Shown: piece after piece, positions 2,747 to 39,993 of the stretch
How the letters are laid out: each line of letters starts with the position of its first letter
Position numbering within the stretch: the first letter of the stretch is position 1
Virus record (IMG/VR): IMGVR_UViG_3300048625_000299
Coordinates: 1 to 64,000 of that record
DNA: 64,000 nt
Reading direction: 5' to 3' (one strand)
Program-made: the position numbers and the translations under genes
Notes under the pieces: model-generated
What the model saw: only the letters and a program-made list of their open reading frames with translations
Databases searched by the model: none
Told to the model about the DNA's origin: nothing

Positions 2747-3400
2747 ATGAAACTATTCACAGAATTAGTAGAAGATGTTCAATACGTAGTAGAGGAACGC
2801 GGCGGCAAGAAGGACTTGTTTATTGTCGGTCCTTTCATGCAAGCAGAACAACAAAACCGCAATGGCCGTATCTACCGCAAAAGCATCCTTGAGCGCGAAG
2901 TAGAGCGTTACTCAAACGACTACATCAAGACAAACCGTGCGCTAGGCGAACTAGGCCACCCAAACGGCCCAGCAATTAACCTTGACCGTGTGTGTATCAA
3001 GATTGTTGAGTTAAAACAAAATGGCAATGATTTCATGGGCAAGGCTAAGATCCTTGGCACACCGATGGGAGACATTGCAAGAAATCTATTAGAGAGTGGC
3101 GTTCAGTTGGGCGTTTCTACACGCGGCATGGGCTCTTTAAAAGAAGTTAATGGCATCATGGAAGTCCAGGACGACTTCTTCTTGGCTACTGCAGCTGACG
3201 TTGTGGCTGATCCATCAGCTCCGGATGCATTCGTTCAAGGGATTATGGAAGGCGTTGATTGGGTGTGGGATAACGGCGTTATCAAAGCCCGACAAGTTGA
3301 GCAAATCAAAGAGTCTATCGTAAAAGCAAGCGCAAAAGACTTGCAAGAAGCTAAGATTGCTGCGTTCCAACAATACTTAAAATTCCTTACTACTAAATAG
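2747..3400 (+). CDS. gp21: prohead protease
   Basis: NRNGRIY, ALGELGHP, GVSTRGMGS, DVVADPSAPDAFV motifs. Confidence 0.96.
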   Translation: MKLFTELVEDVQYVVEERGGKKDLFIVGPFMQAEQQNRNGRIYRKSILEREVERYSNDYIKTNRALGELGHPNGPAINLDRVCIKIVELKQNGNDFMGKAKILGTPMGDIARNLLESGVQLGVSTRGMGSLKEVNGIMEVQDDFFLATAADVVADPSAPDAFVQGIMEGVDWVWDNGVIKARQVEQIKESIVKASAKDLQEAKIAAFQQYLKFLTTK

Positions 3401-3403
3401 TTT

Positions 3404-3411
3404 TATAAATA
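3404..3411 (+). promoter_or_regulatory. late promoter TATAAATA
   Basis: Consensus upstream of gp22. Confidence 0.8.
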
Positions 3412-25367: not shown

Positions 25368-25371
25368 GTTT

Positions 25372-25442
25372 TAGAATAGTTACAGCAACACACAAAGAAC
25401 ACCAAACTTTTAATTTGACATGTTCGTCAACGCTATTCTGTT
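25372..25442 (+). ncRNA. stem-cassette RNA A (Lys-UUU anticodon-loop-like cargo)
   Basis: TAGAATAG-TTAC-AGCAA ... CTATTCTG-TT. Confidence 0.75.
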
Positions 25443-25448
25443 ATATTT

Positions 25449-25687: not shown

Positions 25688-25691
25688 GTTT

Positions 25692-25813
25692 TAGGATACT
25701 TGCAGCAATGACTTAAAAGTCAGTAGGTTCGATTCCTACATTTGGAGCTTTCCAAATCCGTCGTAAGGTACGACAAACGATTGAAACTCGTTCAACTAAA
25801 AAGGTATCCTGTT
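25692..25813 (+). ncRNA. stem-cassette RNA B (permuted tRNA-Phe-like cargo)
   Basis: TAGGATAC-TTGC-AGCAA ... GTATCCTG-TT; cargo order V, T, acceptor, D, anticodon(GAA). Confidence 0.8.
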
Positions 25814-25821
25814 GTATTTGT

Positions 25822-25896
25822 AGGGGGCTTGTCGTCTGGTGATGACACTACGCTTTGACCGTAGGAAGATGAGTTCGATCCTCATGCCCCCCGCCA
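25822..25896 (+). tRNA. tRNA-Gln(TTG)
   Basis: Cloverleaf, CCA. Confidence 0.85.
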
Positions 25897-25929
25897 GTTT
25901 TTGTTTAACTAATTTAATGGAGGCAGTCT

Positions 25930-26064
25930 ATGAAAAAGACGAAACCGATCGTGCGCGAACGTAACTGCTTCGTTCGATTAGCACTATTCCGTAAAGCAGG
26001 ATCGCACCGCAAGTCTAACAAGGCATTGCGTAAAGCGATCAACCAATCATCGTTGGGTTTATAG
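25930..26064 (+). CDS. small basic protein (44 aa)
   Basis: GGAGG RBS; MKKTKPIVRERN...KAGSHRKSNK; stop lies inside tRNA-Lys. Confidence 0.6.
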   Translation: MKKTKPIVRERNCFVRLALFRKAGSHRKSNKALRKAINQSSLGL

Positions 26065-26131
26065 TTTAACGGCAAAAACATCTGGCTTTTAACCAGTAAG
26101 AGTCTCGGTTCGAATCCGAGTAGACCCACCA
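26055..26131 (+). tRNA. tRNA-Lys(TTT)
   Basis: Cloverleaf, CCA. Confidence 0.92.
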
Positions 26132-26210
26132 TATGAAAGCATACTACCGAAGTTGGTTCGGTTAGACAGGGAGATCCAATTGCCTATGTCGTTAGTGTGT
26201 TTTTATATGG
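26129..26210 (+). ncRNA. long-stem structured element S3
   Basis: CCATATGAAAGCATACTA / TAGTGTGTTTTTATATGG. Confidence 0.55.
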
Positions 26211-26273
26211 TACGTAATTTGAGTACAATGGTCACACGCCCTTGCTTAGATTACAAACGCCATAATAATTTAT

Positions 26274-26349
26274 TCCATCTTAGTATTCTCGGTGAGTACG
26301 CCCGGCTGTTAACCGGAGAAGGTTGGTTCGAATCCAACAGATGGAGCCA
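26274..26349 (+). tRNA. tRNA-Asn(GTT)
   Basis: Cloverleaf, CCA. Confidence 0.85.
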
Positions 26350-26354
26350 GTTAT

Positions 26355-26413
26355 GGGGCAAAAAGCGGATTCTGTCCAATGAATCTTTTGCAGCACACTG
26401 TAATGCCCCGCCA
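26355..26413 (+). ncRNA. 59-nt D-armless tRNA-like mini RNA
   Basis: GGGGCA/TGCCCC-GCCA acceptor plus two hairpins. Confidence 0.5.
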
Positions 26414-26417
26414 AATT

Positions 26418-26481
26418 TAGGATCCTTTCAGCAAAACTTATACTTTCACTTTTGGCTGTGAAAAGCAAAGCGGATCCTGTT
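26418..26481 (+). ncRNA. stem-cassette RNA C
   Basis: TAGGATCC-TTTC-AGCAA ... GGATCCTG-TT. Confidence 0.75.
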
Positions 26482-26487
26482 GAACAT

Positions 26488-26565
26488 GCCCACGTAGTGC
26501 AATTGGTAGGAGACAACGGTCTTAGAAGCCGAACAGTGTCGGTTCGAATCCGACCGTGGGCACCA
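26488..26565 (+). tRNA. tRNA-Leu(TAG), short variable loop
   Basis: Cloverleaf, A73, CCA. Confidence 0.88.
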
Positions 26566-26568
26566 AAT

Positions 26569-26637
26569 TTATACACAGATGTTGGTTCGATTCCAACCCT
26601 GATGAAGAGTAGCATAATATGGCAATGCAGTGTATAA
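26569..26637 (+). ncRNA. stand-alone permuted tRNA-elbow mimic
   Basis: TTATACAC / T-arm / short linker / D-arm / GTGTATAA. Confidence 0.55.
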
Positions 26638-26688
26638 TCCAAGCCTCGCGCTGACTTGTCGCGTATAATGAGATAAATTACAAGTCAC

Positions 26689-26791
26689 TTTTCTAGAGCA
26701 TATCGCGGCTGAGGCTAGGCCGTTATGTGGATCATAGCTGGGCCTTTCGGCTTGGTCGCCAGTTCAATTCTGGTAGATGTGTTCTAGAAAA
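26689..26791 (+). ncRNA. cloverleaf-like element S4 with extended terminal stem
   Basis: 16-bp closing stem, D-like arm, GCCAG-TTCAATT-CTGGT T-arm, no CCA. Confidence 0.5.
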
Positions 26792-26795
26792 GTTT

Positions 26796-26870
26796 GGGCT
26801 GATAGTGATAATGGGAGCACAGTGGCTTTGCAAGCCTCGGGTCGGGGTTCGATCCCCCGTCGGTCCACCA
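26796..26870 (+). tRNA. tRNA-Ala(TGC)
   Basis: G3:U70, CCA. Confidence 0.88.
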
Positions 26871-26879
26871 AATTTTAAT

Positions 26880-26956
26880 CCGTCCGTAGCACAATTGGAG
26901 AATGTTCCGTCCTACGAAGTCGAGAGGTGGGGGTTCGAATCCCTCCGGACGGACCA
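26880..26956 (+). tRNA. tRNA-Arg(ACG)
   Basis: Cloverleaf with weak anticodon stem, CCA. Confidence 0.82.
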
Positions 26957-27105
26957 TACTATAGTGTATTCTTCGTCATATGCGGGGTTTCAGGTTCCAC
27001 GTCAAATGTGCCAGAATGAGAATAGTCCTGCAGGTTAATGCTCAGGGTAACACATTAATACTTACAGACAGGTTGACACTTGTTTGGGAATGCATTATAA
27101 TATGG
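26954..27105 (+). ncRNA. long-stem structured element S5
   Basis: CCATACTATAGTGTATTCT / GGAATGCATTATAATATGG. Confidence 0.5.
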
Positions 27106-27110
27106 TTTAT

Positions 27111-27183
27111 GCGGGGTTAGTTTAGTGGTAAAACACTTTCCTTCCAAGTAAGAGTTGCGGGTTCGATTCCCGCACCCCGCTCC
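27111..27183 (+). tRNA. tRNA-Gly(TCC), no encoded CCA
   Basis: Canonical cloverleaf ending TCC-C. Confidence 0.9.
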
Positions 27184-27207
27184 CTTGAGTCGATGTCAAG
27201 ACTCGAA
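27182..27207 (+). repeat. 26-nt direct repeat, copy 1
   Basis: CCCTTGAGTCGATGTCAAGACTCGAA, identical to 28690-28715. Confidence 0.9.
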
Positions 27208-27223
27208 ACTTATAAATAAAAGT

Positions 27224-27763
27224 ATGGAAAAAACATACTATACAATTTATAAGATAACGAATCGGATTAATGGCAAGATCTATATTGGATCGCATAAGAC
27301 CAAAAATCTGAATGACAACTATATGGGTTCTGGAAAATACTTAAAGTATGCCCAAGACAAATATGGTATTGAAAAGTTTGAAAAAGAAATATTGTTCGTA
27401 TTTGATACGGCGCAAGAGATGTACGCTAAGGAAGCGGAAATTGTCAATGTTGAGTTCTTAGCTGAGCATAACACTTACAACATTAAAGTTGGAGGGTTTG
27501 GCGGTTGGGATCACATTAATAATGATGTAGAATTTCGTACGCAGAAAAATCAGCTAGCAAGGGCACGAGCTCAAGCTGCAGGGGCTTCGGATAAAGCAAA
27601 GTTATACAACACTGAACGGAGACGTCAGTATGATCTGAATCCAGCACGATGCGCTTCATGTAGCCAACCGCTTGATTTTTTAAAGCGCAAGAATAAATTC
27701 TGTGGGCATAGTTGTTCAGCTAAGTTGACCAACACCACTAGAGTTCGCAAATCGAACAAGTAA
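27224..27763 (+). CDS. GIY-YIG (Seg-like) homing endonuclease
   Basis: YTIYKITN...KIYIGSH, YMGSG, YN motif; late promoter at 27211. Confidence 0.9.
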   Translation: MEKTYYTIYKITNRINGKIYIGSHKTKNLNDNYMGSGKYLKYAQDKYGIEKFEKEILFVFDTAQEMYAKEAEIVNVEFLAEHNTYNIKVGGFGGWDHINNDVEFRTQKNQLARARAQAAGASDKAKLYNTERRRQYDLNPARCASCSQPLDFLKRKNKFCGHSCSAKLTNTTRVRKSNK

Positions 27764-27767
27764 GTTT

Positions 27768-27829
27768 TAGGATAGTTACCGCAATCAAAAAGCTAACTAT
27801 GGTTGTCTAGCGACAAAAGCTATCCTGTT
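27768..27829 (+). ncRNA. stem-cassette RNA D
   Basis: TAGGATAG-TTAC-CGCAA ... CTATCCTG-TT. Confidence 0.75.
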
Positions 27830-27836
27830 GATTAAT

Positions 27837-27918
27837 GGATGAGATGCTCTAATGGTAGGGCAGCGGGCTGTAACCCCGTGGCTTCGGCAAGTAGGTTCGA
27901 TCCCTACCTCATCCACCA
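27837..27918 (+). tRNA. tRNA-Tyr(GTA)
   Basis: Class II cloverleaf, CCA. Confidence 0.9.
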
Positions 27919-28104
27919 TTTAAGTGACCAGTTTCCGTAACAACTAGAGATGACTGGATCCATCATGATGAACAGTTACGGACGAAGCGTGGGAGTGGAA
28001 GAAGGTCTTGTTGTGTCTCCCGAAAATAAATGACGAAAGTCTTAGCGACAACGAGTAATATCAGTATAACCTAAGGGCGATGGCAAGCCTCTGATAGCCT
28101 TTAT

Positions 28105-28191
28105 GGACGTGTAGGAAAATTGGTAACCCCAGGAGACTGTAAATCTTCCGCCCGCAAGGCACTACTGGTTCGACTCCAGTCGCGTCCACCA
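28105..28191 (+). tRNA. tRNA-Tyr(GTA)
   Basis: Class II cloverleaf, CCA. Confidence 0.88.
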
Positions 28192-28193
28192 AA

Positions 28194-28376
28194 TTAATCG
28201 AATACAAATCTACAGTTGATTTGTTTTAACTGTCCGTCGAGTTTGAATTCAGTTTCGACTTTCGGATAGCAATCGGCAAATGTGCCAACGCAAGTAGACG
28301 TTTTAGTCTCTTTGTAAGGTTGACCATCAGCTAGCTTGTAAAGCAGTTTGAGGTTGTATTCATCATCATATGCCAT
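28194..28376 (-). CDS. small antisense-oriented protein (60 aa)
   Basis: GGAG upstream of ATG on the minus strand; exactly fills the gap between two tRNAs. Confidence 0.5.
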   Translation of the reverse strand: MAYDDEYNLKLLYKLADGQPYKETKTSTCVGTFADCYPKVETEFKLDGQLKQINCRFVFD

Positions 28377-28388
28377 AGAAATATTTAT

Positions 28389-28466
28389 CTCCGATTCGCC
28401 TAGTCTGGTATGGCACTTCGTTTGGGACGAAGAATAACGGGAGTTCAAATCTCTCATCGGAGACCA
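28389..28466 (+). tRNA. tRNA-Pro(TGG)
   Basis: Cloverleaf, CCA. Confidence 0.9.
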
Positions 28467-28618
28467 AGAATTAGTCGGAAAGCAAGAGCCGAAAAGTAAA
28501 TAGTAGGCGACCTAGCCACCTCGGTCGTCTTTGTAGTGTATACTGCGTCAGGGAGCCTGGAAGGGTAACTTGAGAAACACTGGGGTAAGAATCCCAATTG
28601 ATGGTGAGCGCAAATTTC

Positions 28619-28691
28619 CAGGGGGTATGATAGTGGTAGTCGCCGAGGTTTGGAACCTTGTAGTGGGAGTTCGATTCTCCCTCCCCTGACC
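28619..28691 (+). tRNA. tRNA-Pro(TGG), no encoded CCA
   Basis: Cloverleaf ending ACC-C. Confidence 0.85.
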
Positions 28692-28715
28692 CTTGAGTCG
28701 ATGTCAAGACTCGAA
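28690..28715 (+). repeat. 26-nt direct repeat, copy 2
   Basis: Identical to 27182-27207. Confidence 0.9.
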
Positions 28716-28726
28716 CGATTATAAAT

Positions 28727-29389
28727 ATGTGTATGTATTACACTGTTTATAAAACGACGAATAAGATTAATGGCAAGATCTATATTGGATCACATAAGAC
28801 CAAAAATCTTAATGATAATTACCTGGGTTCAGGTAAGTATTTGAAGCGTGCCATAGAAAAGTATGGAGTAGATTCTTTCACTAGGGAAATACTGTTCATA
28901 TTTGAAACAGCAGAGGAAATGTATGCTAAAGAGGCGGAGCTTGTGAACGCAGAGTTCCTAACTGAAGAAAATACATACAACCTCAAGGTTGGAGGTTTTG
29001 GTGGGTTTGACTATATAAATTCCAACCCCGAAAAATACCTAACGCCCAAGAGGCTTGCAGCGCTGATGCCTGGACATGAGTTGCAAAGGCGGCTGTGGGA
29101 AAAATATTATTCCGATCCTGCGTTTAGAGCCAAGCGCCAAGAGCAATCTAGACATGCTCTAAACGTAGCTAGAACAAAATCGCGTGCTCCCTTCAAAGGA
29201 CGCAAGCATTCGGATGTTGTAAAACAAAAAATAGCTGCAAAGGCTAGAGAAAGATCTGCAGATAATCCACAAGGAAACTCCCAGTATGGGACGATATGGA
29301 TTACAGATGGTGTTGAAAATAAGAAGATTAATAAAACTGATGTCTTACCAGATGGTTGGTATAGGGGCAGAGTTTTTAAAAAAGTATAA
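28727..29389 (+). CDS. GIY-YIG (Seg-like) homing endonuclease with NUMOD3-like segment
   Basis: YTVYKTTN...KIYIGSH; FKGRKHS; WITDG...GWYRGR; late promoter at 28720. Confidence 0.9.
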   Translation: MCMYYTVYKTTNKINGKIYIGSHKTKNLNDNYLGSGKYLKRAIEKYGVDSFTREILFIFETAEEMYAKEAELVNAEFLTEENTYNLKVGGFGGFDYINSNPEKYLTPKRLAALMPGHELQRRLWEKYYSDPAFRAKRQEQSRHALNVARTKSRAPFKGRKHSDVVKQKIAAKARERSADNPQGNSQYGTIWITDGVENKKINKTDVLPDGWYRGRVFKKV

Positions 29390-29390
29390 T

Positions 29391-29468
29391 GTCTGGGTGG
29401 CAGAGCGGCCCATTGCAACGGATTGCAAATCCGTAAAGTCGTCGGTTCAAATCCGACCCCAGATTCCA
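29391..29468 (+). tRNA. tRNA-Cys(GCA)
   Basis: U73, CCA. Confidence 0.9.
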
Positions 29469-29476
29469 ATTTTAAT

Positions 29477-29550
29477 GCGTGGTTAGTTTAATGGTAAAAT
29501 CAGACGTTGCCAACGTTTAGTTAAGGGTTCGATTCCCTTACCCCGCACCA
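29477..29550 (+). tRNA. tRNA-Gly(GCC)
   Basis: Cloverleaf, CCA. Confidence 0.88.
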
Positions 29551-29556
29551 GTTTAT

Positions 29557-29632
29557 GCTCCTTTCGTATAGTGATTTATTACATCGGTTTTGTAGTCCGA
29601 GAACAGCAGTTTGATTCTGCTAGGGAGCTCCA
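29557..29632 (+). tRNA. tRNA-Thr(TGT), atypical
   Basis: Cloverleaf, TTTGA T-loop, CCA. Confidence 0.78.
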
Positions 29633-29640
29633 GTTTATTT

Positions 29641-29716
29641 GCTCGCGAAGTATTAGTTGGTGGTATGCCGCTTTCGTAATGCGGAGGATCGGGTTCGAGG
29701 CCTGACGTGAGCACCA
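29641..29716 (+). tRNA. tRNA-Thr(CGT)
   Basis: Cloverleaf, CCA. Confidence 0.8.
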
Positions 29717-29720
29717 AAGT

Positions 29721-29940
29721 TTTGTAAGTGTCAGCAAGTGCAGTCACGCTAGTGATGGTAAGTTCGAACTACCTAACTAGTAAAAGGGGACGGGTTCAAC
29801 TCCCGGCTGATCGGAAGATCGGTGCAGATTGGTTGCTAACTGGACAGGTACCCAAGTGATATCCATCGCGTGACGGGGTCAGGCTAGGCGGCCGGTAGGT
29901 CCTGACTAAATCTACGATAAACGTGACGTAGGCTTACAAA
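29721..29940 (+). ncRNA. 220-nt structured RNA X with two T-loop-like hairpins
   Basis: TTTGTAAG-TGTC-AGCAA ... CTTACAAA; GTCACG/CGTGAC helix. Confidence 0.55.
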
Positions 29941-29949
29941 TTTAATTAT

Positions 29950-30024
29950 GGAGTAGTTAGTTTAGTGGCAAAACCGCGGGTTGTGATTCCGCTATCACGG
30001 GTTCGATTCCCGTACTTCTCCCCA
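29950..30024 (+). tRNA. tRNA-His(GTG)
   Basis: G-1:C73, CCA. Confidence 0.9.
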
Positions 30025-30141
30025 TATGAAAGTATTCTTGGTATAAGTCAAAGCGGAAGAAGAGACCCACGTGGATGCATACGCAACGGTCTCAGAGCTC
30101 AGTCTCCTTCTAGGCCTGCATTCGAGAGTGCTTTTATATGG
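30022..30141 (+). ncRNA. long-stem structured element S6
   Basis: CCATATGAAAGTATTCT / AGAGTGCTTTTATATGG. Confidence 0.55.
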
Positions 30142-30146
30142 CATAT

Positions 30147-30234
30147 GCCTCGGTGTTGGAATTTGGTAGACAAGCTAGAATGAGAGTCTAGTATCCGAAA
30201 GGATGTGTGGGTTCGATTCCCATCTGAGGCACCA
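30147..30234 (+). tRNA. tRNA-Leu(GAG)
   Basis: Class II cloverleaf, CCA. Confidence 0.9.
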
Positions 30235-30249
30235 ATTAAAAAGTACATT

Positions 30250-30325
30250 GCCTGTGTAGCTCCAATGGTAGAGCAGTGGATTGAAAATCCATGTGTTGCT
30301 GGTTCGAGTCCAGCCATAGGCACCA
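30250..30325 (+). tRNA. tRNA-Phe(GAA)
   Basis: Canonical, CCA. Confidence 0.95.
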
Positions 30326-30336
30326 AGTTTGACCAT

Positions 30337-30456
30337 TAGGTTCATTTCAGCAATCAAAATAATCTTTCTTAGAAAAAGAGGGTCTGGGTTCGAATCCCAG
30401 CGCGGAGTTGGTCTTCCGTGTGGTGTAAGGGTAGCACGAAAAAAGTTGAACCTGTT
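30337..30456 (+). ncRNA. stem-cassette RNA E (permuted tRNA, TAG anticodon)
   Basis: TAGGTTCA-TTTC-AGCAA ... TGAACCTG-TT; cargo order anticodon, T, acceptor, D. Confidence 0.82.
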
Positions 30457-30470
30457 AAAATAAATGCAAT

Positions 30471-30547
30471 GGCTCAGTAGTTCCAATTGGCAGAACGGCG
30501 GATTCCAAATCCGCGTGTTGGAGGTTCGAATCCTTCCTGGGTCGCCA
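30471..30547 (+). tRNA. tRNA-Trp(CCA)
   Basis: Canonical, G73, CCA; U11-A24. Confidence 0.95.
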
Positions 30548-30554
30548 AAAGTTT

Positions 30555-30656
30555 TAGGATAGTTACAGCAAAACAAAACGCTTGTCATTGGTTGACAATT
30601 TGCCTTCTAAGCAAACCTAGCAGGTTCAATTCCTGCAGCAAAACAACTATCCTGTT
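30555..30656 (+). ncRNA. stem-cassette RNA F (acceptor-less tRNA-Arg(TCT)-like cargo)
   Basis: TAGGATAG-TTAC-AGCAA ... CTATCCTG-TT; D, anticodon and T arms in normal order. Confidence 0.8.
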
Positions 30657-30665
30657 GATTATCAC

Positions 30666-30756
30666 GGAGAGCGAAGCAGACAGGCGCGCTGCCACCGCCT
30701 TGAAAGCGGCTGGATCCTGAAAGGGATTGGATTTCGAGTATACCCGCTCTCCGCCA
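30666..30756 (+). tRNA. tRNA-Ser(TGA), atypical T-arm
   Basis: Class II, G73, CCA. Confidence 0.8.
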
Positions 30757-30763
30757 AAATTAT

Positions 30764-30878
30764 GTCGCGATGGTGTAATGGTAGCACGCTATAAAAGGTG
30801 ATCCTGATTAGGATACGTGCAGCATACATTTTCCACTGTCAATGGAGATGCCCAGGTTCGATTCCTGGTCGCGACGCC
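30764..30878 (+). tRNA. tRNA-Asp(GTC) interrupted by a 42-nt insertion (30789-30830)
   Basis: GTCGCGA/TCGCGAC acceptor with D, anticodon and T arms intact; insert carries cassette motifs in swapped order. Confidence 0.75.
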
Positions 30879-30883
30879 TCTTT

Positions 30884-30989
30884 TAGGATGAATGCAGCAA
30901 CATAAAAACTCTTCCACCATTCAGGGAGGCCGGCCCGCAGGGGGCATGTCGTTGGGTTCGAGTCCCGGTCTTAGACACATCATCCTGTT
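30884..30989 (+). ncRNA. stem-cassette RNA H (T-arm-containing cargo)
   Basis: TAGGATGA-ATGC-AGCAA ... TCATCCTG-TT. Confidence 0.78.
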
Positions 30990-30998
30990 ATTCAATGT

Positions 30999-31074
30999 TC
31001 CCTCTTCGCCAAGTTGGTAAGGCATCGGATTTTGATTCCGACATTCGGTGGTTCGAGTCCATCAGGGGGAGCCA
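30999..31074 (+). tRNA. tRNA-Gln(TTG)
   Basis: Canonical, CCA. Confidence 0.93.
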
Positions 31075-31221
31075 AGTTTTTGCAGTCTTAGCCTGGAGCT
31101 AGGGTAAAGGGTGTTGCGGGTGGCATCGAGACTCTACGGAGATTCGAGCGTTAAAGTTATCACCGATAAACATCGTAGCGCAACTTCAATCAATATGTGG
31201 AGCCTGCTGCAGAATTAATAT

Positions 31222-31310
31222 GGAAGATACAGCTGTGTGGTCACAGCATCCGCCTGGAACGCGGACGGTTGGTTCTGCTGGCCGGAGTTCGACTCTCCTA
31301 TCTTCCTCCA
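31222..31310 (+). tRNA. tRNA-Ser(GGA)
   Basis: Class II, CCA. Confidence 0.82.
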
Positions 31311-31434
31311 TATAAAAGCTCTTTGAGCAGCTACACTGGAGTTCATCAAGTAACCGCCAAGTCGACTACGCGGTAAACGTTGCCAGGAAGTAGGGCTGCC
31401 ATGGATTCAAGTACCGCAGAGAGCCTCTATATGG
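31308..31434 (+). ncRNA. long-stem structured element S7
   Basis: CCATATAAAAGCTCT / AGAGCCTCTATATGG. Confidence 0.55.
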
Positions 31435-31520
31435 ACGATTACCTAGTCAGGGACTAGCACTGATTCGAAACCAGTTGGATTCAGAAATGGGTTGGGGTTC
31501 GATACCTCAGTCGTCCGCCA
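31433..31520 (+). tRNA. tRNA-Ser(CGA)
   Basis: Class II, G73, CCA. Confidence 0.85.
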
Positions 31521-31542
31521 TTCACAAATTAAGGGGATACCG

Positions 31543-31677
31543 ATGAAACGAAAAGATGTATTCGATAAGGCATATGGTAGTGTCCCCCATGAAGTTGGCT
31601 TCAATGTCGACCTAGATATTAATGTATTCAGAGGATTCAGGTATTATTACTTGAAGATGATACGTTTCTTTAGATAG
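31543..31677 (+). CDS. small hypothetical protein
   Basis: AAGGGG RBS, 44 aa. Confidence 0.55.
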   Translation: MKRKDVFDKAYGSVPHEVGFNVDLDINVFRGFRYYYLKMIRFFR

Positions 31678-31684
31678 GAGCATT

Positions 31685-31933
31685 ATGTCAAATGAGCAAC
31701 ACAAAGAACAACATTCCAAACGTCTGCATCAAAAAGAGACGCATGTTGCAAAGCAAGTAAAGATCGCTAAGGCGTATGGCATATCTGTTAAAGAGCCACA
31801 CAAGCTAGCAAAGCATAATGCAATGAATTGTGGAGATCCAAACTGCTTGATGTGTATGAATCCCCGCAAAGCATTTAATGAGAAGACGATTCAAGAACGT
31901 CGATTTGATCAGCCTTTAGCTCAAGGAGAGTAA
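31685..31933 (+). CDS. conserved phage hypothetical protein (CxxxxCxxC)
   Basis: AGGAG RBS; CGDPNCLMCMNPRK. Confidence 0.7.
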   Translation: MSNEQHKEQHSKRLHQKETHVAKQVKIAKAYGISVKEPHKLAKHNAMNCGDPNCLMCMNPRKAFNEKTIQERRFDQPLAQGE

Positions 31934-31934
31934 A

Positions 31935-32609
31935 ATGAAAAAGGTAATCGAGATTCGCGCTGCTGAAGGCGGCGACGATAGTAAATTATTCGTAAAGGAC
32001 CTAGCGCAAAGCTACGTCAAGTTCGCAGACCGCAAGGGCTGAACTACCCGCCTGATAGGTGAGTACCTCGGAGAGCTTCATATTGAAGTCAAGGGGTCTG
32101 ACTTATCCGGACTAGAAAACGAAGCAGGCGGGCATCGAATCCAAAGAGTTCCTCCGACGGAACGAAAAGGTAGAGTACATACTAGCACCGTCACGGTCGC
32201 TATCATTGATAGCGCATCCGAGATCAAGACGGAATCTATACCAGACCATGAATTAAAAGTGGAGTGGTATAGCGGGACGGGGGCTGGTGGGCAACATCGA
32301 AACAAGCATCAAAACAGTTGTAGACTAACACACATTCCAACTGGAATAGTAACTACTGCACAATGTCGTAGTAGAGAGAATAGTCTGAACGAAGCACGAT
32401 CGTCATTGACACATCGTGTGAACTCGTTGACTAAGGATGCGTTTCATAGTAATGTAGCCAGTAACAGAAAACAACAAGTTGGTTCTGGGATGCGTGGCGA
32501 TAAGATCAGGACATATCGTTTCCAAGATGATCGTGTGCAAGACCATAGAACCGATAAAGTAGTCAGCTTGAAGAAAGTGATGGCTGGCGCGTTTGATCTG
32601 TTTTGGTAA
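31935..32609 (+). CDS. class I peptide release factor-like protein with in-frame TGA at codon 36
   Basis: EIRAAEGG, HRIQRVPPTERKGRVHTS, GAGGQHRNK, KIRTY in one frame across TGA 32040-32042. Confidence 0.85.
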
Positions 32610-32628
32610 ACACAACAAAGGAAGTATA

Positions 32629-32820
32629 ATGGCAAATCGTATTAACGAGTTTGAAGAAGTAGTTTCAGCAATGCGTGCTGATTTCGAAAAGTTCTATGAT
32701 AAAGAAACTAATGCTGCTGGCGCTCGCGTCCGTAAGCATTGCCAAGCGCTGGCTGTTCTCTGTAAGGAAGTTCGTAAGGACGTCACTGAAGTGAAAGCTG
32801 CACGCGCTGCTGCAAAGTAA
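32629..32820 (+). CDS. histone H1-like (Hc1-type) small protein
   Basis: KFYDKETNAAGARVRK...KEVRKDV. Confidence 0.65.
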   Translation: MANRINEFEEVVSAMRADFEKFYDKETNAAGARVRKHCQALAVLCKEVRKDVTEVKAARAAAK

Positions 32821-32905
32821 TTCTGCTTGCAAGCTGATCTCGGTGCTCCCGTTCTCCCGAGTTAGAATAGCTGATAATGTTTCAGTAAGACGGGGCCAAA
32901 TTTAA

Positions 32906-32995
32906 GGTGCGGTCCCATAATGGTATTGGAGCGGATTGCTAATCCGTCGGTCGGCGAAAGCCGGCTTCTGAGTTCGAGTCTCAGTCGCACCGCCA
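32906..32995 (+). tRNA. tRNA-Ser(GCT)
   Basis: Class II, CCA. Confidence 0.9.
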
Positions 32996-33000
32996 GTTCT

Positions 33001-33090
33001 CCCGCTGTAGCTCAAGGAGAGCAGGGGGTCTTATAAGCCCTTAATCTAGATAAGGTCCAGGATGTGGTTCGATTCCACACAGCGGGACCA
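33001..33090 (+). tRNA. tRNA-Ile(TAT) with long variable region
   Basis: CTTATAA loop, A73, CCA. Confidence 0.8.
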
Positions 33091-33097
33091 AAAGTTT

Positions 33098-33300
33098 TAG
33101 GATCCATGCAGCAACATAAAATGCATTGAAAGCCTCGTGTTGGTGGTGCAAGTCCACCCTCCCTCACTAAGGGCACTTTATGGAGTGACCCGCCATACTA
33201 CTAAAGGATCGCAACCTGTAGTAATATCCAACGTATGGTATTGTGCCCTTAGTGAGGGAGTAGCTCAAGTAGTAGAGCAGAGTAAAAAGCGGATCCTGTT
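33098..33300 (+). ncRNA. stem-cassette RNA I (YrlA-like permuted module with 18-bp acceptor)
   Basis: TAGGATCC-ATGC-AGCAA ... GGATCCTG-TT; T-arm, CTCCCTCACTAAGGGCAC/GTGCCCTTAGTGAGGGAG, D-arm. Confidence 0.82.
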
Positions 33301-33307
33301 GTTTAAG

Positions 33308-37926: not shown

Positions 37927-37931
37927 GTTTT

Positions 37932-37988
37932 TAGGTTAAGTTCCGCACAACAATTTCTATTCATAAAAGAGAAAAAGTTTAACCTGTT
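37932..37988 (+). ncRNA. stem-cassette RNA K
   Basis: TAGGTTAA-GTTC-CGCA ... TTAACCTG-TT, 19 nt before the ATG. Confidence 0.75.
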
Positions 37989-38007
37989 GATTGAAAAGGA
38001 GTTCATT

Positions 38008-39441
38008 ATGTCAACATTCGCTGAAGCTGTAGTAAACCAAGAAGCCCGTACCACGAATGGTATGGTGGCACGCAAGTCCACTGCAAATGCGTGCGTCGAT
38101 TTATTCTTCAAGATCGGTGCTTCCCGCGGTAAGGACATCACGAAGGATTTCGTGGCCGCATACGCTGAGAACAAAGATGTCGCGTTGCGCATCGCTCAAT
38201 GGGTCCGTGATGCTCGTGGTGGGGCAGGCGAACGTGATCTGTACCGCCAGATCTTGAAGTATCTCGAAAAGCACGATAAGGACGCTGCTGCAGCTTTGCT
38301 GTTGAAGACTCCTGAAATCGGTCGCTGGGATGATATCTTCGTGTTCGAAGACAAAGATTTGAAGGCTAAGGCTTTCACGATGTTGGGAGATGCTCTCCGC
38401 GTACGTAACGGTCTCGCTGCAAAGTGGACGCCACGTCAAGGTAAGCTCGCTGCTGAAATCCGGTCATTCTTCGGAATGTCCCCAAAGTTCTATCGTAAGT
38501 CGTTGGTTGAATTGACCAACGTTGTGGAACAACAAATGTGTGCAAAAGAATGGGATGCAATCAACTTCTCGCATGTGCCGTCCGTGGCTGCTGCTCGTTA
38601 CAAGAAAGCATTCAGCCGTAACACACAAGAGTATACCAAGTACGTTGCTGAGTTGATGAAGGATCCAAAGGATCGTAAAGTCAACGTCAAGATCAACGCT
38701 GGCGCTGTGTTTCCATATGATGTGTTGAAGGGCGTTATCGGTGCATACCGCAACAACTACAGCGCAACTGAACTCGGAGCATTGCAAGCTCAATGGGATG
38801 CGATGGAAAACTTCATCGGCGACGCAAACGTCTTGCCGTTGGTAGACGTGTCTGGTTCGATGTCATGTCGTGCTGGTGGTTCTGCTTCCCAAAGCACGAC
38901 TACTTGTATGGATGTCGCAGTGTCGCTAGGTTTGTACCTTGCTGACAAGAACAAGGGTAAGTTCAAGGATACGTTCTTGACATTCTCAGGTTCACCAGAG
39001 TTGCTGAACCTGAAGGGCAACATTGTTCAGAAAGTCCAACAAATGTCATCCTCTAACTGGGGTATGAACACAGACTTGGTGAAGGCGATGGATAAGATCT
39101 TGAGCACAGCCAAGAACGGCAATGTTCCTCAAGAAGAAATGCCAGACATGCTGTTGATTCTTTCAGACATGCAATTCGATCAATGCGCTCGTTTCGACGA
39201 CTCTGCAATGAAGATGATTGCACGTAAGTTCGAAGAAGCAGGCTACGAATTGCCAAAGATCGTATTCTGGAACCTGAACGCTGCGGACAATGTCCCAGTT
39301 AAGTACGACACTCGTGGTGTTGCTTTGGTGTCTGGCTTCTCGCCAGCTATCATGACGGCAGTACTCGGTGGCGATGCTGATAAGTTCACACCAGAAGCTA
39401 TGATGCTGAAGGCAGTGATGCTTCCACGTTACGATCTGTAA
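38008..39441 (+). CDS. Ro60/TROVE-like protein with vWA domain (DUF2828-type)
   Basis: RDARGGAGER, GRWDD, AAKWTPR, MIDAS DVSGSM, SDMQFD, VFWNL, VSGFS. Confidence 0.82.
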   Translation: MSTFAEAVVNQEARTTNGMVARKSTANACVDLFFKIGASRGKDITKDFVAAYAENKDVALRIAQWVRDARGGAGERDLYRQILKYLEKHDKDAAAALLLKTPEIGRWDDIFVFEDKDLKAKAFTMLGDALRVRNGLAAKWTPRQGKLAAEIRSFFGMSPKFYRKSLVELTNVVEQQMCAKEWDAINFSHVPSVAAARYKKAFSRNTQEYTKYVAELMKDPKDRKVNVKINAGAVFPYDVLKGVIGAYRNNYSATELGALQAQWDAMENFIGDANVLPLVDVSGSMSCRAGGSASQSTTTCMDVAVSLGLYLADKNKGKFKDTFLTFSGSPELLNLKGNIVQKVQQMSSSNWGMNTDLVKAMDKILSTAKNGNVPQEEMPDMLLILSDMQFDQCARFDDSAMKMIARKFEEAGYELPKIVFWNLNAADNVPVKYDTRGVALVSGFSPAIMTAVLGGDADKFTPEAMMLKAVMLPRYDL

Positions 39442-39478: not shown

Positions 39479-39495
39479 AAAAATTGAGGTGTACC

Positions 39496-39993
39496 ATGAA
39501 GAAAATTGATCTTGCTGAAGTGAAAAGATTCATCGAAGCACAATCTGAAGATACCAAAATCTATATCGGCGCCGATTCGACGCGATTCAAGATGGAGGGC
39601 AGATGGTATGCTGACTACACTCTTGCAGTTGTAGTCCACATCGACGGTAACCATGGTTGCAAAATCTTTGGTGAAGTACAACGTGAACTAGACTACGACC
39701 AAAAGAAGTCGAAGCCAGCAATGCGTCTGATGAACGAAGTGTATAAGGTTTCGGAACTATTCCAAAATCTTTCGGAAGTGTTAGAGGACCGTTATGTCGA
39801 AGTTCACTTGGACATTAACCCTAACATGATGTATGGCTCCTCGTGCGTCGTACAACAAGCTATCGGATACATCAAGGGTACGTGTAACGTCACGCCAATG
39901 GTGAAGCCACAAGCGTTCGCAGCTTCGTATGCAGCTGACAGACTGAAAGAAGTCTTGGCATCCGACAAGATGAAAGCAGTAGCGACAGCATAA
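39496..39993 (+). CDS. RNase H-like YkuK family protein
   Basis: IYIGADS, RLMNEV, EVHLDIN, AASYAAD. Confidence 0.8.
   Translation: MKKIDLAEVKRFIEAQSEDTKIYIGADSTRFKMEGRWYADYTLAVVVHIDGNHGCKIFGEVQRELDYDQKKSKPAMRLMNEVYKVSELFQNLSEVLEDRYVEVHLDINPNMMYGSSCVVQQAIGYIKGTCNVTPMVKPQAFAASYAADRLKEVLASDKMKAVATA

What the first reader, a model, noticed from the sequence alone, without database searches (positions are those of the whole stretch)
25692..33300. Circularly permuted tRNAs opened at different points within cassettes B, E and I
Seen: B has a variable hairpin, T-arm (GTAGG-TTCGATT-CCTAC), loop-closed acceptor (ATTTGGA-GCTT-TCCAAAT), D-arm (GTCG/CGAC) and anticodon arm (AACGA-TTGAAAC-TCGTT, GAA). E has an anticodon arm (TCTTT-CTTAGAA-AAAGA, TAG), T-arm, closed acceptor (CGCGGAG/TTCCGTG) and D-arm. 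I has a T-arm, a perfect 18-bp acceptor enclosing a ~75-nt insert, and a D-arm, with the handle in place of the anticodon arm as in YrlA. Known: permuted tRNA genes occur in some algae and archaea; YrlA lacks an anticodon arm. Permuted bodies that keep an anticodon arm are unusual for a phage, and standard tRNA finders would miss them.
Basis: partly seen in the sequence, partly recalled or inferred. Interest (0 to 1): 0.8.

Follow-up and report, generated by a model that had tools for sequence, protein, structure and literature searches.

The report
Ro-linked small RNAs carrying rearranged tRNAs
Cassettes B, E and I are tRNA look-alikes written in rotated order inside a conserved RNA "handle", most likely partner RNAs of the phage's own Ro60-like ring protein rather than working tRNAs, and the same unannotated element occurs in many cultured phages.

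Summary
B and E each contain all four tRNA arms in circularly permuted order, with the acceptor stem capped by a 4-6 nt loop. After in-silico re-ordering ARAGORN calls them tRNA-Phe(GAA) and tRNA-Leu(UAG); reversed and shuffled controls give nothing. I has a T arm, an 18-bp closed acceptor and a D arm but no anticodon arm, which is the YrlA layout.

They are probably not permuted tRNA genes of the algal or archaeal kind. They are three of at least ten "handle" cassettes in the tRNA array of a T4-like freshwater jumbo phage. The handle is a closing stem, then UUNCAGCAA, the cargo, an A-run, the returning stem and GUU. The last cassette ends 16 nt before a DUF2828/DUF7788 gene whose AlphaFold model matches Ro60.

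The link between cassette and Ro-like gene recurs in IMG/VR contigs and in KVP40, Felix O1-like, Listeria A511 and mycobacteriophage genomes. E-type cassettes show compensatory changes in the helices, while the anticodon triplet varies.

Unexpectedly, short cassettes match Rfam's Dictyostelium Class I RNA model below its threshold.

Best reading: Y-RNA-like tRNA mimics, a new variant of a known kind. Function and protein binding are inferred, not shown.

The parts
25369..25445 (+). Cassette A: handle plus an anticodon-loop-like hairpin (loop CUUUUAA)
25689..25816 (+). Cassette B. Order: handle, variable hairpin, T arm, closed acceptor (loop GCUU), D arm, anticodon arm (GAA). The RNA ends lie in the variable-loop position.
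   Evidence: RNAfold; coordinates; ARAGORN after re-ordering gives tRNA-Phe(gaa) with a long variable arm
26415..26484 (+). Cassette C: short handle cassette
   Evidence: Rfam Class I RNA 20.7 bits
27765..27832 (+). Cassette D: short handle cassette
30334..30459 (+). Cassette E. Order: handle, anticodon arm (UAG), 4-nt variable loop, T arm, closed acceptor (loop UUGGUC), U8 G9, D arm. The RNA ends lie between nt 26 and 27.
   Evidence: ARAGORN after re-ordering gives a 71-nt tRNA-Leu(tag); covariation in 9 orthologues
30552..30659 (+). Cassette F: handle, hairpin, anticodon arm (UCU), T arm; no acceptor or D arm
30764..30876 (+). Cassette G: a normal-order tRNA-Asp(GUC)-like body with the handle closed into a hairpin (AUCCU-GAUU-AGGAU, then GCAGCA) inserted between nt 26 and 27. 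It is the un-rotated counterpart of E and has nearly the same D arm (one D-loop base differs).
   Evidence: Rfam tRNA 50.3 bits with a 43-nt insert; coordinates; analogues in L020 and L028
30881..30992 (+). Cassette H: handle, two hairpins and a T arm
33095..33303 (+). Cassette I. Order: handle, T arm (loop UGCAAGU), 18-bp closed acceptor with a 66-nt insert, U8 A9, D arm. The handle takes the place of the anticodon arm (YrlA layout).
   Evidence: orthologues L009, L107, L116 with compensating acceptor stems
37929..37991 (+). Cassette J: short handle cassette ending 16 nt before the start codon of the Ro-like gene. Orthologues in related contigs carry a tRNA-like cargo.
38008..39441 (+). Ro60-like ring protein (DUF2828 + DUF7788), the inferred protein partner of the handle
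   Evidence: Pfam; AF2 model pLDDT 91.6; Foldseek top nine PDB hits are all Ro60/TROVE (E 1.5e-9, TM 0.62)
39484..39993 (+). PF04308 RNaseH-like gene directly after the Ro-like gene; the same pair is found in KVP40

Best explanation
B, E and I are members of a family of small non-coding RNAs cut out of the phage's long tRNA transcript.

Architecture. Each RNA is closed by a conserved handle: UUUU, then AGGAUnnn, then U(A/U)CAGCAA, the cargo, an A-run, nnnAUCCU and GUU. I infer that this handle is the docking site of the phage's own Ro60-like ring protein, which would make the cassettes Y-RNA-like. The cargo is made of tRNA parts. It can be an anticodon stem-loop alone (short cassettes), a YrlA-type T arm, closed acceptor and D arm (I), or a whole cloverleaf in rotated order with the acceptor capped (B, E). 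In every case the handle leaves the tRNA body at the central junction, where a long variable arm would sit.

Function. Because the acceptor end is sealed and lacks CCA, these RNAs most likely do not decode. They would present a tRNA elbow and, in B and E, an anticodon loop to tRNA-recognising factors while tethered to the Ro-like ring. My preferred function is bait or adaptor against tRNA-directed host defence or RNA turnover.

Shown: the anatomy, its conservation and covariation, the synteny with the Ro-like gene, and the Ro60-like fold.
Inferred: protein binding, processing by tRNA enzymes, and the anti-defence role.
For: - Fold and re-ordering tests. Twenty of 77 long cassettes give consistent tRNA calls after re-ordering; reversed controls give 0.
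- E family: 94% of cells paired, 13 pairs with compensatory change, 0 of 500 shuffles as good, about 50% paired when the partners are slid.
- Handle stem: 97.6% paired across 24 cassettes, including ones from Listeria and mycobacterial phages.
- Ro60-like fold of ORF 38008-39441.
- Synteny: in 35 of 119 IMG/VR loci the gene is present, and in most of them a cassette ends within about 100 nt (often 15-30 nt) upstream of it on the same strand, at 56-74% protein identity.
- The same arrangement is seen in KVP40, Felixounavirus HY02, A511 and Krypton555.
- Rfam YrlA model hits relatives' cassettes at E 7e-8 to 3e-3.
- In a contig otherwise identical over 189 nt, three of the four differences are the E anticodon (UAG to GUA).
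- A Felixounavirus Ro60-like protein (Bas63 gp130) was shown to counter the Ppl defence system, and its authors guessed that neighbouring 'tRNAs' are Y RNAs.
Against: - There are no binding data.
- The handle lacks the GNCGAA/CGAA motif of known bacterial and phage Y RNAs.
- The Rfam YrlA model does not hit B, E or I themselves.
- B lies 12 kb and E 7.6 kb from the Ro-like gene.
- Only metatranscriptome contigs were available, so transcript ends, processing and even transcription are not proven.
- The cassette sets were collected with a filter that required a closing stem, so the covariation of the handle stem is partly built in.
- G-type relatives with an open acceptor and encoded CCA (L020, L028) suggest some family members could be chargeable.
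Confidence: 0.6

Rival explanations
1. They are true permuted or split tRNA genes. RNase P and a 3' nuclease open the acceptor loop and CCA is added. The two pieces, clamped by the handle (or ligated after the handle is removed), then work as a decoding tRNA.
For: - Re-ordered B and E pass ARAGORN.
- A 7-bp acceptor stacked on a T arm is the RNase P determinant, and M. smegmatis YrlA is cut by RNase P and receives CCA in vivo.
- Some relatives carry ACCA right after the acceptor 3' strand (L107:5900, L116:5614).
- G-type relatives have open ends with CCA.
Against: - B, E and I have no CCA in the loop, while 36 of 39 real tRNAs here encode it.
- The loop UUGGUC is conserved in most of the 9 E orthologues, which is unexpected for a discarded spacer.
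- One class-I body carries Leu, Phe, Arg, Tyr and Ser anticodons. From textbook identity rules (not tested here), that body would not suit LeuRS, TyrRS or SerRS.
- B lacks U8 and A14.
- Each anticodon duplicates an ordinary tRNA already in the array.
- There is no bulge-helix-bulge, and no RNA ligase in the 64-kb window.
Confidence: 0.12
2. The same Ro-type particle, but acting as in the Deinococcus/Thermus-phage RYPER complex. The RNA only tethers or gates the ring for an exoribonuclease such as PNPase. The tRNA shape merely stabilises the RNA, and the anticodon has no meaning.
For: This has precedent for bacterial Y RNAs and for Thermus phage phiLo Ro60, its Yrl RNAs and host PNPase. Many cassettes have no anticodon arm.
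Against: Anticodon-like loops are about 12-fold enriched and canonical in form (CU-NNN-AA). The triplet is the part that changes between near-identical strains and between E orthologues.
Confidence: 0.2
3. They are DNA-level debris or selfish elements: tRNA fragments shuffled by recombination and homing endonucleases in the array, flanked by inverted repeats, with no RNA function.
For: Two SegE-like GIY-YIG genes and an HNH gene sit inside the array. Cargo is very variable. The relation between E and G fits permutation by tandem duplication.
Against: - All ten cassettes are on the tRNA strand.
- The helices keep pairing through compensatory and G-U changes.
- The scaffold and its position next to the Ro-like gene persist down to 32% protein identity, in phages of Proteobacteria, Firmicutes and Actinobacteria.
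- Two independent Rfam models hit them.
Confidence: 0.05

Closest known systems
YrlA / bacterial and phage Y RNAs (Rfam RF02553; Chen et al. 2014, PMC4201824)
   Same: - Encoded beside a Ro60-type gene on the same strand.
- The 5' and 3' ends pair.
- Internal tRNA-like module in the order V, T, closed acceptor, D, which is exactly cassette I and, with an extra arm, B.
- Several Y RNAs per genome, including short hairpin forms.
- The YrlA model hits relatives' cassettes at up to 48.9 bits.
   Different: - No GNCGAA motif; a different conserved handle (UUNCAGCAA plus an A-run).
- The partner is a DUF2828-type rather than a Pfam-TROVE-type Ro.
- B and E keep a canonical anticodon arm.
- E opens at nt 26/27.
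- Ten copies are scattered through a tRNA array.
- B, E and I are below any YrlA score.
Class I RNAs of dictyostelid amoebae (Rfam RF01414; Kjellin et al. 2021, PMC7919456)
   Same: - A short covarying stem joins the 5' and 3' ends.
- A conserved motif lies right after the 5' arm: CCUUACAGCAA in Class I RNAs, UUNCAGCAA here, and ACAGCAAUUA in A511 and Krypton555.
- An A-rich run precedes the 3' arm.
- The 3' end is ...CUGU.
- Length is about 60 nt, with many copies per genome and a variable middle.
- Nine full-length model hits in 19.5 kb, eight of them on cassettes I had called independently.
   Different: - Scores of 23-33 bits are under the gathering score of 41.5.
- Class I RNAs are eukaryotic, have their own promoter element, and are reported as unique to Dictyostelia with an RRM protein partner.
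- No tRNA cargo is known for them.
- Whether Dictyostelium has a DUF2828 protein was not testable here.
Permuted tRNA genes of Cyanidioschyzon merolae and some archaea
   Same: The 3' half of the tRNA is encoded before the 5' half, and ordinary tRNA finders miss them.
   Different: Those are matured by a splicing endonuclease acting on a bulge-helix-bulge, through a circular intermediate, into working tRNAs (my own knowledge, not tested). Here the ends form a plain conserved stem, the acceptor is sealed without CCA, and the context is a Ro-type particle.
Bas63 gp130, a Ro60-like anti-defence protein of a Felix O1-like coliphage (preprint 10.1101/2024.10.10.617714)
   Same: A Ro60-like protein next to a tRNA array. 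Felix O1-like phages carry a DUF2828 homologue (38-39% identity) with a short cassette and an E-type cassette 0.8-1.0 kb downstream.
   Different: That work showed a protein phenotype (counter to Ppl). It only guessed that some neighbouring tRNA genes are Y RNAs and did not identify the RNAs. That gp130 is the DUF2828 homologue rests on my memory of Bas63's taxonomy, not on a test.

Membership tests
Functional tRNA (RF00005) | Contiguous cloverleaf in the order acceptor-D-anticodon-variable-T-acceptor | tested here: not met
   ARAGORN and Rfam miss B, E and I in genomic order. The cloverleaf is met only after in-silico re-ordering of B and E. I gives inconsistent calls.
Functional tRNA (RF00005) | Free acceptor end with a discriminator base and CCA | tested here: not met
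   The acceptor is closed by GCUU (B), UUGGUC (E) or a 66-nt insert (I), with no CCA. 36 of 39 array tRNAs encode CCA.
Functional tRNA (RF00005) | Conserved core nucleotides (U8, A14, G18 G19, T54 Psi55 C56, A58) | tested here: inconclusive
   E has all of them. B has C8 and U14. I has T loop UGCAAGU and no GG in the D loop.
Permuted tRNA gene (algal/archaeal type) | 3' half encoded upstream of the 5' half | tested here: met
Permuted tRNA gene (algal/archaeal type) | Transcript ends form a bulge-helix-bulge for the splicing endonuclease | tested here: not met
   The ends form an uninterrupted 7-10 bp stem.
Permuted tRNA gene (algal/archaeal type) | Circular intermediate and a mature linear tRNA | not testable with these tools
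   Only assembled contigs of metatranscriptomes were available, with no read ends or back-joins.
YrlA / Y RNA | Encoded near a Ro60 orthologue on the same strand | tested here: met
   Ro60-like fold. J ends 16 nt upstream of the gene, I lies 4.7 kb, E 7.6 kb and B 12 kb away. The synteny recurs.
YrlA / Y RNA | GNCGAA(N)G motif near the 5' end | tested here: not met
   The handle has U(A/U)CAGCAA instead.
YrlA / Y RNA | tRNA-like module with T arm, closed acceptor stem-loop and D arm | tested here: met
YrlA / Y RNA | Rfam RF02553 gathering score (69 bits) | tested here: not met
   No hit on B, E or I at E<10. Relatives score 30.8-48.9 bits, E down to 7e-8.
YrlA / Y RNA | Bound by the Ro protein | not testable with these tools
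   Needs pull-down or gel shift.
Dictyostelid Class I RNA (RF01414) | Short covarying stem joining the 5' and 3' ends | tested here: met
   Caveat: the cassette finder required a stem.
Dictyostelid Class I RNA (RF01414) | 11-nt motif CCUUACAGCAA next to the 5' arm; conserved ends AAG...CUGU | tested here: inconclusive
   CAGCAA was required by the search pattern, so it is not independent. The final A is present in 95% and the preceding U in 85% of cassettes. The 3' end is CCUGUU. A511 and Krypton555 cassettes read ACAGCAAUUA.
Dictyostelid Class I RNA (RF01414) | Rfam gathering score (41.5 bits) | tested here: not met
   Best score 33.1 bits. There were nine full-length hits of 23-33 bits in 19.5 kb, against about 6e-4 expected for a single family at that E-value. 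B scores 13.4, C 20.7 and E 19.0.
Dictyostelid Class I RNA (RF01414) | Length 42-65 nt; dictyostelid host with DUSE promoter | tested here: not met
   Short cassettes fit the length. B, E and I (126-209 nt) do not. The elements are in phages.

The most novel reading that the evidence does not exclude
The handle is the phage form of the dictyostelid Class I RNA scaffold, and both are the cognate RNAs of DUF2828-type Ro60-like rings. Class I RNAs, abundant since their discovery in 2004 but of unknown mechanism and reported as unique to Dictyostelia, would then be the Y RNAs of a second branch of the Ro family. On this reading phages use the same scaffold to display tRNA parts, including whole rotated tRNAs whose anticodon is exchanged between strains, as baits in conflicts over tRNA.
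Probability: 0.3. Interest if true: 0.9.

Novelty: new variant of a known kind. Interest (0 to 1): 0.78.

Why it matters
tRNA-like Y RNAs are known, but this variant differs in four ways:
- It has a different, sharply conserved scaffold.
- Its partner is a different branch of Ro-like proteins, present in more than 700 cultured phage genomes.
- It comes as arrays of up to ten copies.
- Its cargo ranges from a bare anticodon loop to a complete rotated tRNA.

The elements are unannotated even in Felix O1-like, KVP40-like, A511-like and mycobacterial phages that are easy to work with. One Ro-like homologue already has an anti-defence phenotype. The RNAs found here are the obvious missing partners, and the idea can be tested at once.

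The sub-threshold but repeated match to Dictyostelium Class I RNA gives a concrete hypothesis, with a named candidate protein, for an RNA class whose mechanism has been open for twenty years.

For annotation, these cassettes explain many "gaps" and some "pseudo-tRNAs" in phage tRNA arrays.

Tried and rejected
- Megablast of the region against 50,697 phage records found only short tRNA matches, so there is no close cultured relative.
- ARAGORN on the rotated sequence with the handle left in failed, apart from one spurious intron call. The handle has to be removed.
- The Rfam YrlA model on B, E and I alone gave nothing.
- A sequence-profile search of the PDB gave only a weak Ro60 vWA hit (E 0.07). 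The fold search was needed.
- Read laying returned assembled contigs only. There were no transcript ends, no back-joins and no strand. The listed "joints" are differences between related phages or graph joins through the repeated T arm and handle, not RNA processing.
- Considered and dropped: pairing of CAGCA with UGUUG as a pseudoknot (geometrically impossible across a 9-bp stem); integron attC core sites (no GTTRRRY); a hammerhead core at 26598 (no stems); a bulge-helix-bulge at the termini.
- The ESM Atlas listed only viral DUF2828 clusters, so it gave no help on Dictyostelium.
- Not held in the library, so not read: Avesson 2011, Aspegren 2004 and Sim 2020. The other three Class I RNA-binding proteins could therefore not be checked.
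- B-type cassettes (anticodon arm after the D arm) are rare. The two nearest relatives have a 6-nt or 3-nt loop there, so the anticodon-likeness of B is less secure than that of E.

Full report
**What the window is.** The window is part of a 234,864-bp IMG/VR contig. It encodes T4-type portal, major capsid, UvsW, UvsX, clamp loader and DNA polymerase genes. A plus-strand array of about 40 tRNA genes runs from 24.9 to 37.6 kb. It has no close relative among 50,697 deposited phage genomes. It is found in freshwater metatranscriptomes.

**The observation.**
- B (25689-25816) folds as a five-way junction: a closing stem, a small hairpin, a canonical T arm, a 7-bp acceptor capped by GCUU, a D arm, and a 5-bp/7-nt anticodon arm reading GAA.
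- E (30334-30459) has the order closing stem, anticodon arm (UAG), 4-nt variable loop, T arm, 7-bp acceptor capped by UUGGUC, U8 G9, D arm.

The cargo was joined head to tail, with 0-45 and 0-50 nt trimmed at the junction.
- B is called tRNA-Phe(gaa), with a long variable arm, in 229 of 2250 variants.
- E is called tRNA-Leu(tag) in 214 of 2250 variants (295 junction-spanning calls in all).
- Reversed sequences gave 0 calls, and none of 40 dinucleotide shuffles of each gave any.
- I gives only scattered, inconsistent calls.

In genomic order none of the three is found by ARAGORN or by the Rfam tRNA model.

**The cassette family.** B, E and I are three of at least ten cassettes (A to J). All are on the tRNA strand and all lie inside the array. 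Each is framed by the same handle: UUUU, AGGAUnnn, U(A/U)CAGCAA, the cargo, an A-run, nnnAUCCU and GUU.

Cassette G (30764-30876) is the same design un-rotated. It is a normal-order tRNA-Asp(GUC)-like body scoring 50.3 bits with the Rfam tRNA model. The two handle halves are fused into a hairpin inserted between nt 26 and 27, and its D arm is nearly that of E, with one D-loop base different.

So E opens at 26/27, B opens in the variable region, and in I the handle replaces the anticodon arm. These three positions meet at the same junction of the cloverleaf. This is one architecture, not three unrelated break points.

**Related contigs.** The handle pattern occurs in more than 119 IMG/VR contigs. 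From these I extracted 160 unique cassettes. They fall into two size classes.
- The 57-78 nt class is a handle plus one hairpin, often a perfect anticodon stem-loop with loop CUUUUAA, CUUCUAA or CUUGUAA.
- The 120-130 nt class carries tRNA-like bodies.

Anticodon-arm-like hairpins number 56 against 4.7 expected from shuffles. T-arm-like hairpins number 42 against 0.4 expected.

About 31 cassettes have the T arm, closed acceptor, N8 N9, D arm series. Fourteen of these are E-type, fourteen I-type, and B-type is nearly unique. Twenty of the 77 long cassettes give consistent tRNA calls after re-ordering, and none do when reversed.

**Covariation in the E family.** Nine E orthologues align cleanly. 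On the five helices 94% of cells pair. Thirteen of 28 pairs show compensatory change, six of them among the seven acceptor pairs. No shuffle of 500 does as well, and slid partners give about 50% pairing. These internal helices were not used to collect the sequences, so the test is fair.

The anticodon stem UCUUU/AAAGA is almost constant, but the triplet differs among orthologues: UAG, GAA, ACG, GUA, GGA. The closing loop UUGGUC is kept in most of the nine.

In metatranscriptome contigs a strain identical over 189 nt except at four positions has three of those four differences in the E anticodon (UAG to GUA, 30370-30372).

**The protein next door.** Cassette J ends 16 nt before ORF 38008-39441 (DUF2828 + DUF7788). 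Its AlphaFold model is confident (pLDDT 91.6, pTM 0.90). The nine best PDB matches are all Ro60/TROVE rings, including the Thermus phage phiLo Ro60 (E 1.5e-9, TM 0.62 over about 550 columns).

In 35 of the 119 short IMG/VR loci the gene is present. In most of them a handle cassette ends within about 100 nt upstream of it (often 15-30 nt) on the same strand, at 56-74% protein identity.

The protein family occurs in 711 cultured phage records, variously annotated as "RNA-binding protein", "vWFA protein" or "Ro-like RNA binding protein". I looked at four of them:
- KVP40 has two cassettes in its tRNA array.
- Felixounavirus HY02 has a short cassette and an E-type rotated tRNA-like cassette 0.8-1.0 kb downstream. 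Its D arm is identical to that of most E orthologues and of G. The pair is conserved and mostly unannotated in 248 records.
- Listeria phage A511 has three cassettes in tandem just upstream of gp57.
- Mycobacteriophage Krypton555 has three just downstream of gp56, one with a T arm, closed acceptor and D arm, and one with an anticodon-like loop.

Across these lineages the stem sequence changes but keeps pairing (97.6%; the finders required a stem, so this figure is partly built in). The motif ACAGCAA, the A-run and the 3' (U)GU persist.

**Comparison with known RNAs.** Chen et al. 2014 described YrlA: Y RNAs encoded beside Ro60 whose middle mimics a tRNA in the order V, T, closed acceptor, D. 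In M. smegmatis YrlA is cut by RNase P and receives CCA. Cassette I is that plan, and B is that plan plus an anticodon arm.

The Rfam YrlA model does not reach B, E or I. It does hit relatives' cassettes full-length at 30.8-48.9 bits (E down to 7e-8), below the gathering score of 69. The GNCGAA Ro-binding motif is absent.

Unexpectedly, the recurring weak hit on the cassettes is Rfam RF01414, the Class I RNA of Dictyostelium. There are nine full-length hits of 23-33 bits in 19.5 kb, eight of them on cassettes I had called independently. About 6e-4 hits would be expected for one family at that E-value.

Kjellin et al. 2021 define Class I RNAs by a short covarying terminal stem, the motif CCUUACAGCAA next to the 5' arm, the ends AAG...CUGU and a length of about 60 nt. 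They report them as unique to Dictyostelia. The phage handle shares each of these features in part. It stays under the gathering score of 41.5, so I do not file it as a member.

**How it most likely works.** Shown:
- the anatomy;
- conservation and covariation;
- the Ro60-like fold;
- the synteny.

Inferred:
- The cassettes are released from the tRNA precursor by the enzymes that trim the flanking tRNAs.
- The handle binds the Ro-like ring.
- The sealed, CCA-less acceptor keeps the RNA out of translation.
- The tRNA elbow and, in B and E, the anticodon loop are offered to tRNA-recognising factors.

I prefer a bait or adaptor role in conflicts over tRNA for two reasons. First, the anticodon is the fast-changing part. 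Second, a Felix O1-like phage's Ro60-like protein (Bas63 gp130) is needed to overcome the Ppl defence system, and its authors already suspected that neighbouring "tRNAs" are its Y RNAs. This is an inference, and I give the whole reading 0.6.

**Rivals.**
- A true split or permuted tRNA: 0.12.
- A PNPase-tethering RYPER-type particle in which the anticodon is irrelevant: 0.2.
- Recombination debris: 0.05.

**Limits.**
- Only assembled metatranscriptome contigs could be laid on the window. They match it exactly, with depth varying about 150-fold along the array, which points to RNA rather than DNA. They give no ends, strand or processing sites.
- Whether Dictyostelium encodes a DUF2828 protein could not be tested with these tools.
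- B-type cassettes are rare, and the matching hairpin in the two nearest relatives is not anticodon-like. The claim "keeps an anticodon arm" is therefore solid for E and weaker for B.

Noticed in passing
window 29734-29875 (within the gap 29718-29948): A very abundant small RNA in metatranscriptome X1: depth about 9,640 against 60-330 nearby, with sequencing adaptor on both sides. The 230-nt gap begins GUUUU-GUAAGUG-U-CAGCAA and ends ...AGGCUUAC, so it may be an eleventh cassette with a divergent handle. It contains two T-arm-like hairpins. It has no Rfam hit.
   Followed up: partly
window 27806-28077: A second depth peak (about 2,700) covers tRNA-Tyr 27837-27918 and the unannotated 150 nt after it.
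   Followed up: no
window 31935-32609: A release-factor-like gene is interrupted by an in-frame TGA at 32040-32042. The piece before it matches PCRF positions 103-134. The piece after it matches PCRF 153-194 plus the RF-1 domain with its GGQ motif.
   Followed up: partly
window 30370-30372: The anticodon of cassette E reads GTA instead of TAG in contigs of four metatranscriptomes. In one contig these are three of only four differences over 189 nt.
   Followed up: partly
window 26566-26640: An element without a handle: a closing stem UAUACAC/GUGUAUA around a canonical T arm and a D-arm-like hairpin. It gives a weak Rfam YrlA hit (23.8 bits).
   Followed up: partly
window 27184-27212 and 28692-28720: The same hairpin-forming stretch of about 27 nt follows tRNA-Gly(TCC) and tRNA-Pro(TGG), two of the three array tRNAs that lack an encoded CCA. 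In both cases it precedes a SegE-like GIY-YIG endonuclease gene (27224-27763, 28727-29389). This looks like a homing cassette inserted at the tRNA 3' end.
   Followed up: no
L121 7222-7298 and 7314-7437 (Escherichia phage HY02): A short cassette and an E-type rotated tRNA-like cassette lie 0.8-1.0 kb downstream of the Ro-like gene. The pair is conserved at 78-100% identity in 248 cultured Felix O1-like phage records, nearly always unannotated.
   Followed up: yes
L122 4659-4923 (Listeria phage A511); L123 5483-5739 (Mycobacterium phage Krypton555); L120 354-564 and 2595-2841 (KVP40): Tandem cassettes with a stem, ACAGCAA, an A-run, the returning stem and GU lie directly beside the DUF2828 Ro-like gene in phages of Firmicutes and Actinobacteria, and in the KVP40 tRNA array.
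   Followed up: partly
window 39484-39993: A PF04308 RNaseH-like gene follows the Ro-like gene both here and in KVP40 (KVP40.0299). This suggests a conserved two-gene module.
   Followed up: no
L020 about 3265-3410; L028 (minus strand): G-type elements: normal-order tRNA-His(GUG)-like genes with encoded CCA and a closed handle hairpin inserted after the D arm.
   Followed up: partly
window 25823-25893 and 31223-31306: Two tRNA genes found by the Rfam tRNA model (32.7 and 41.7 bits) but not by ARAGORN.
   Followed up: no
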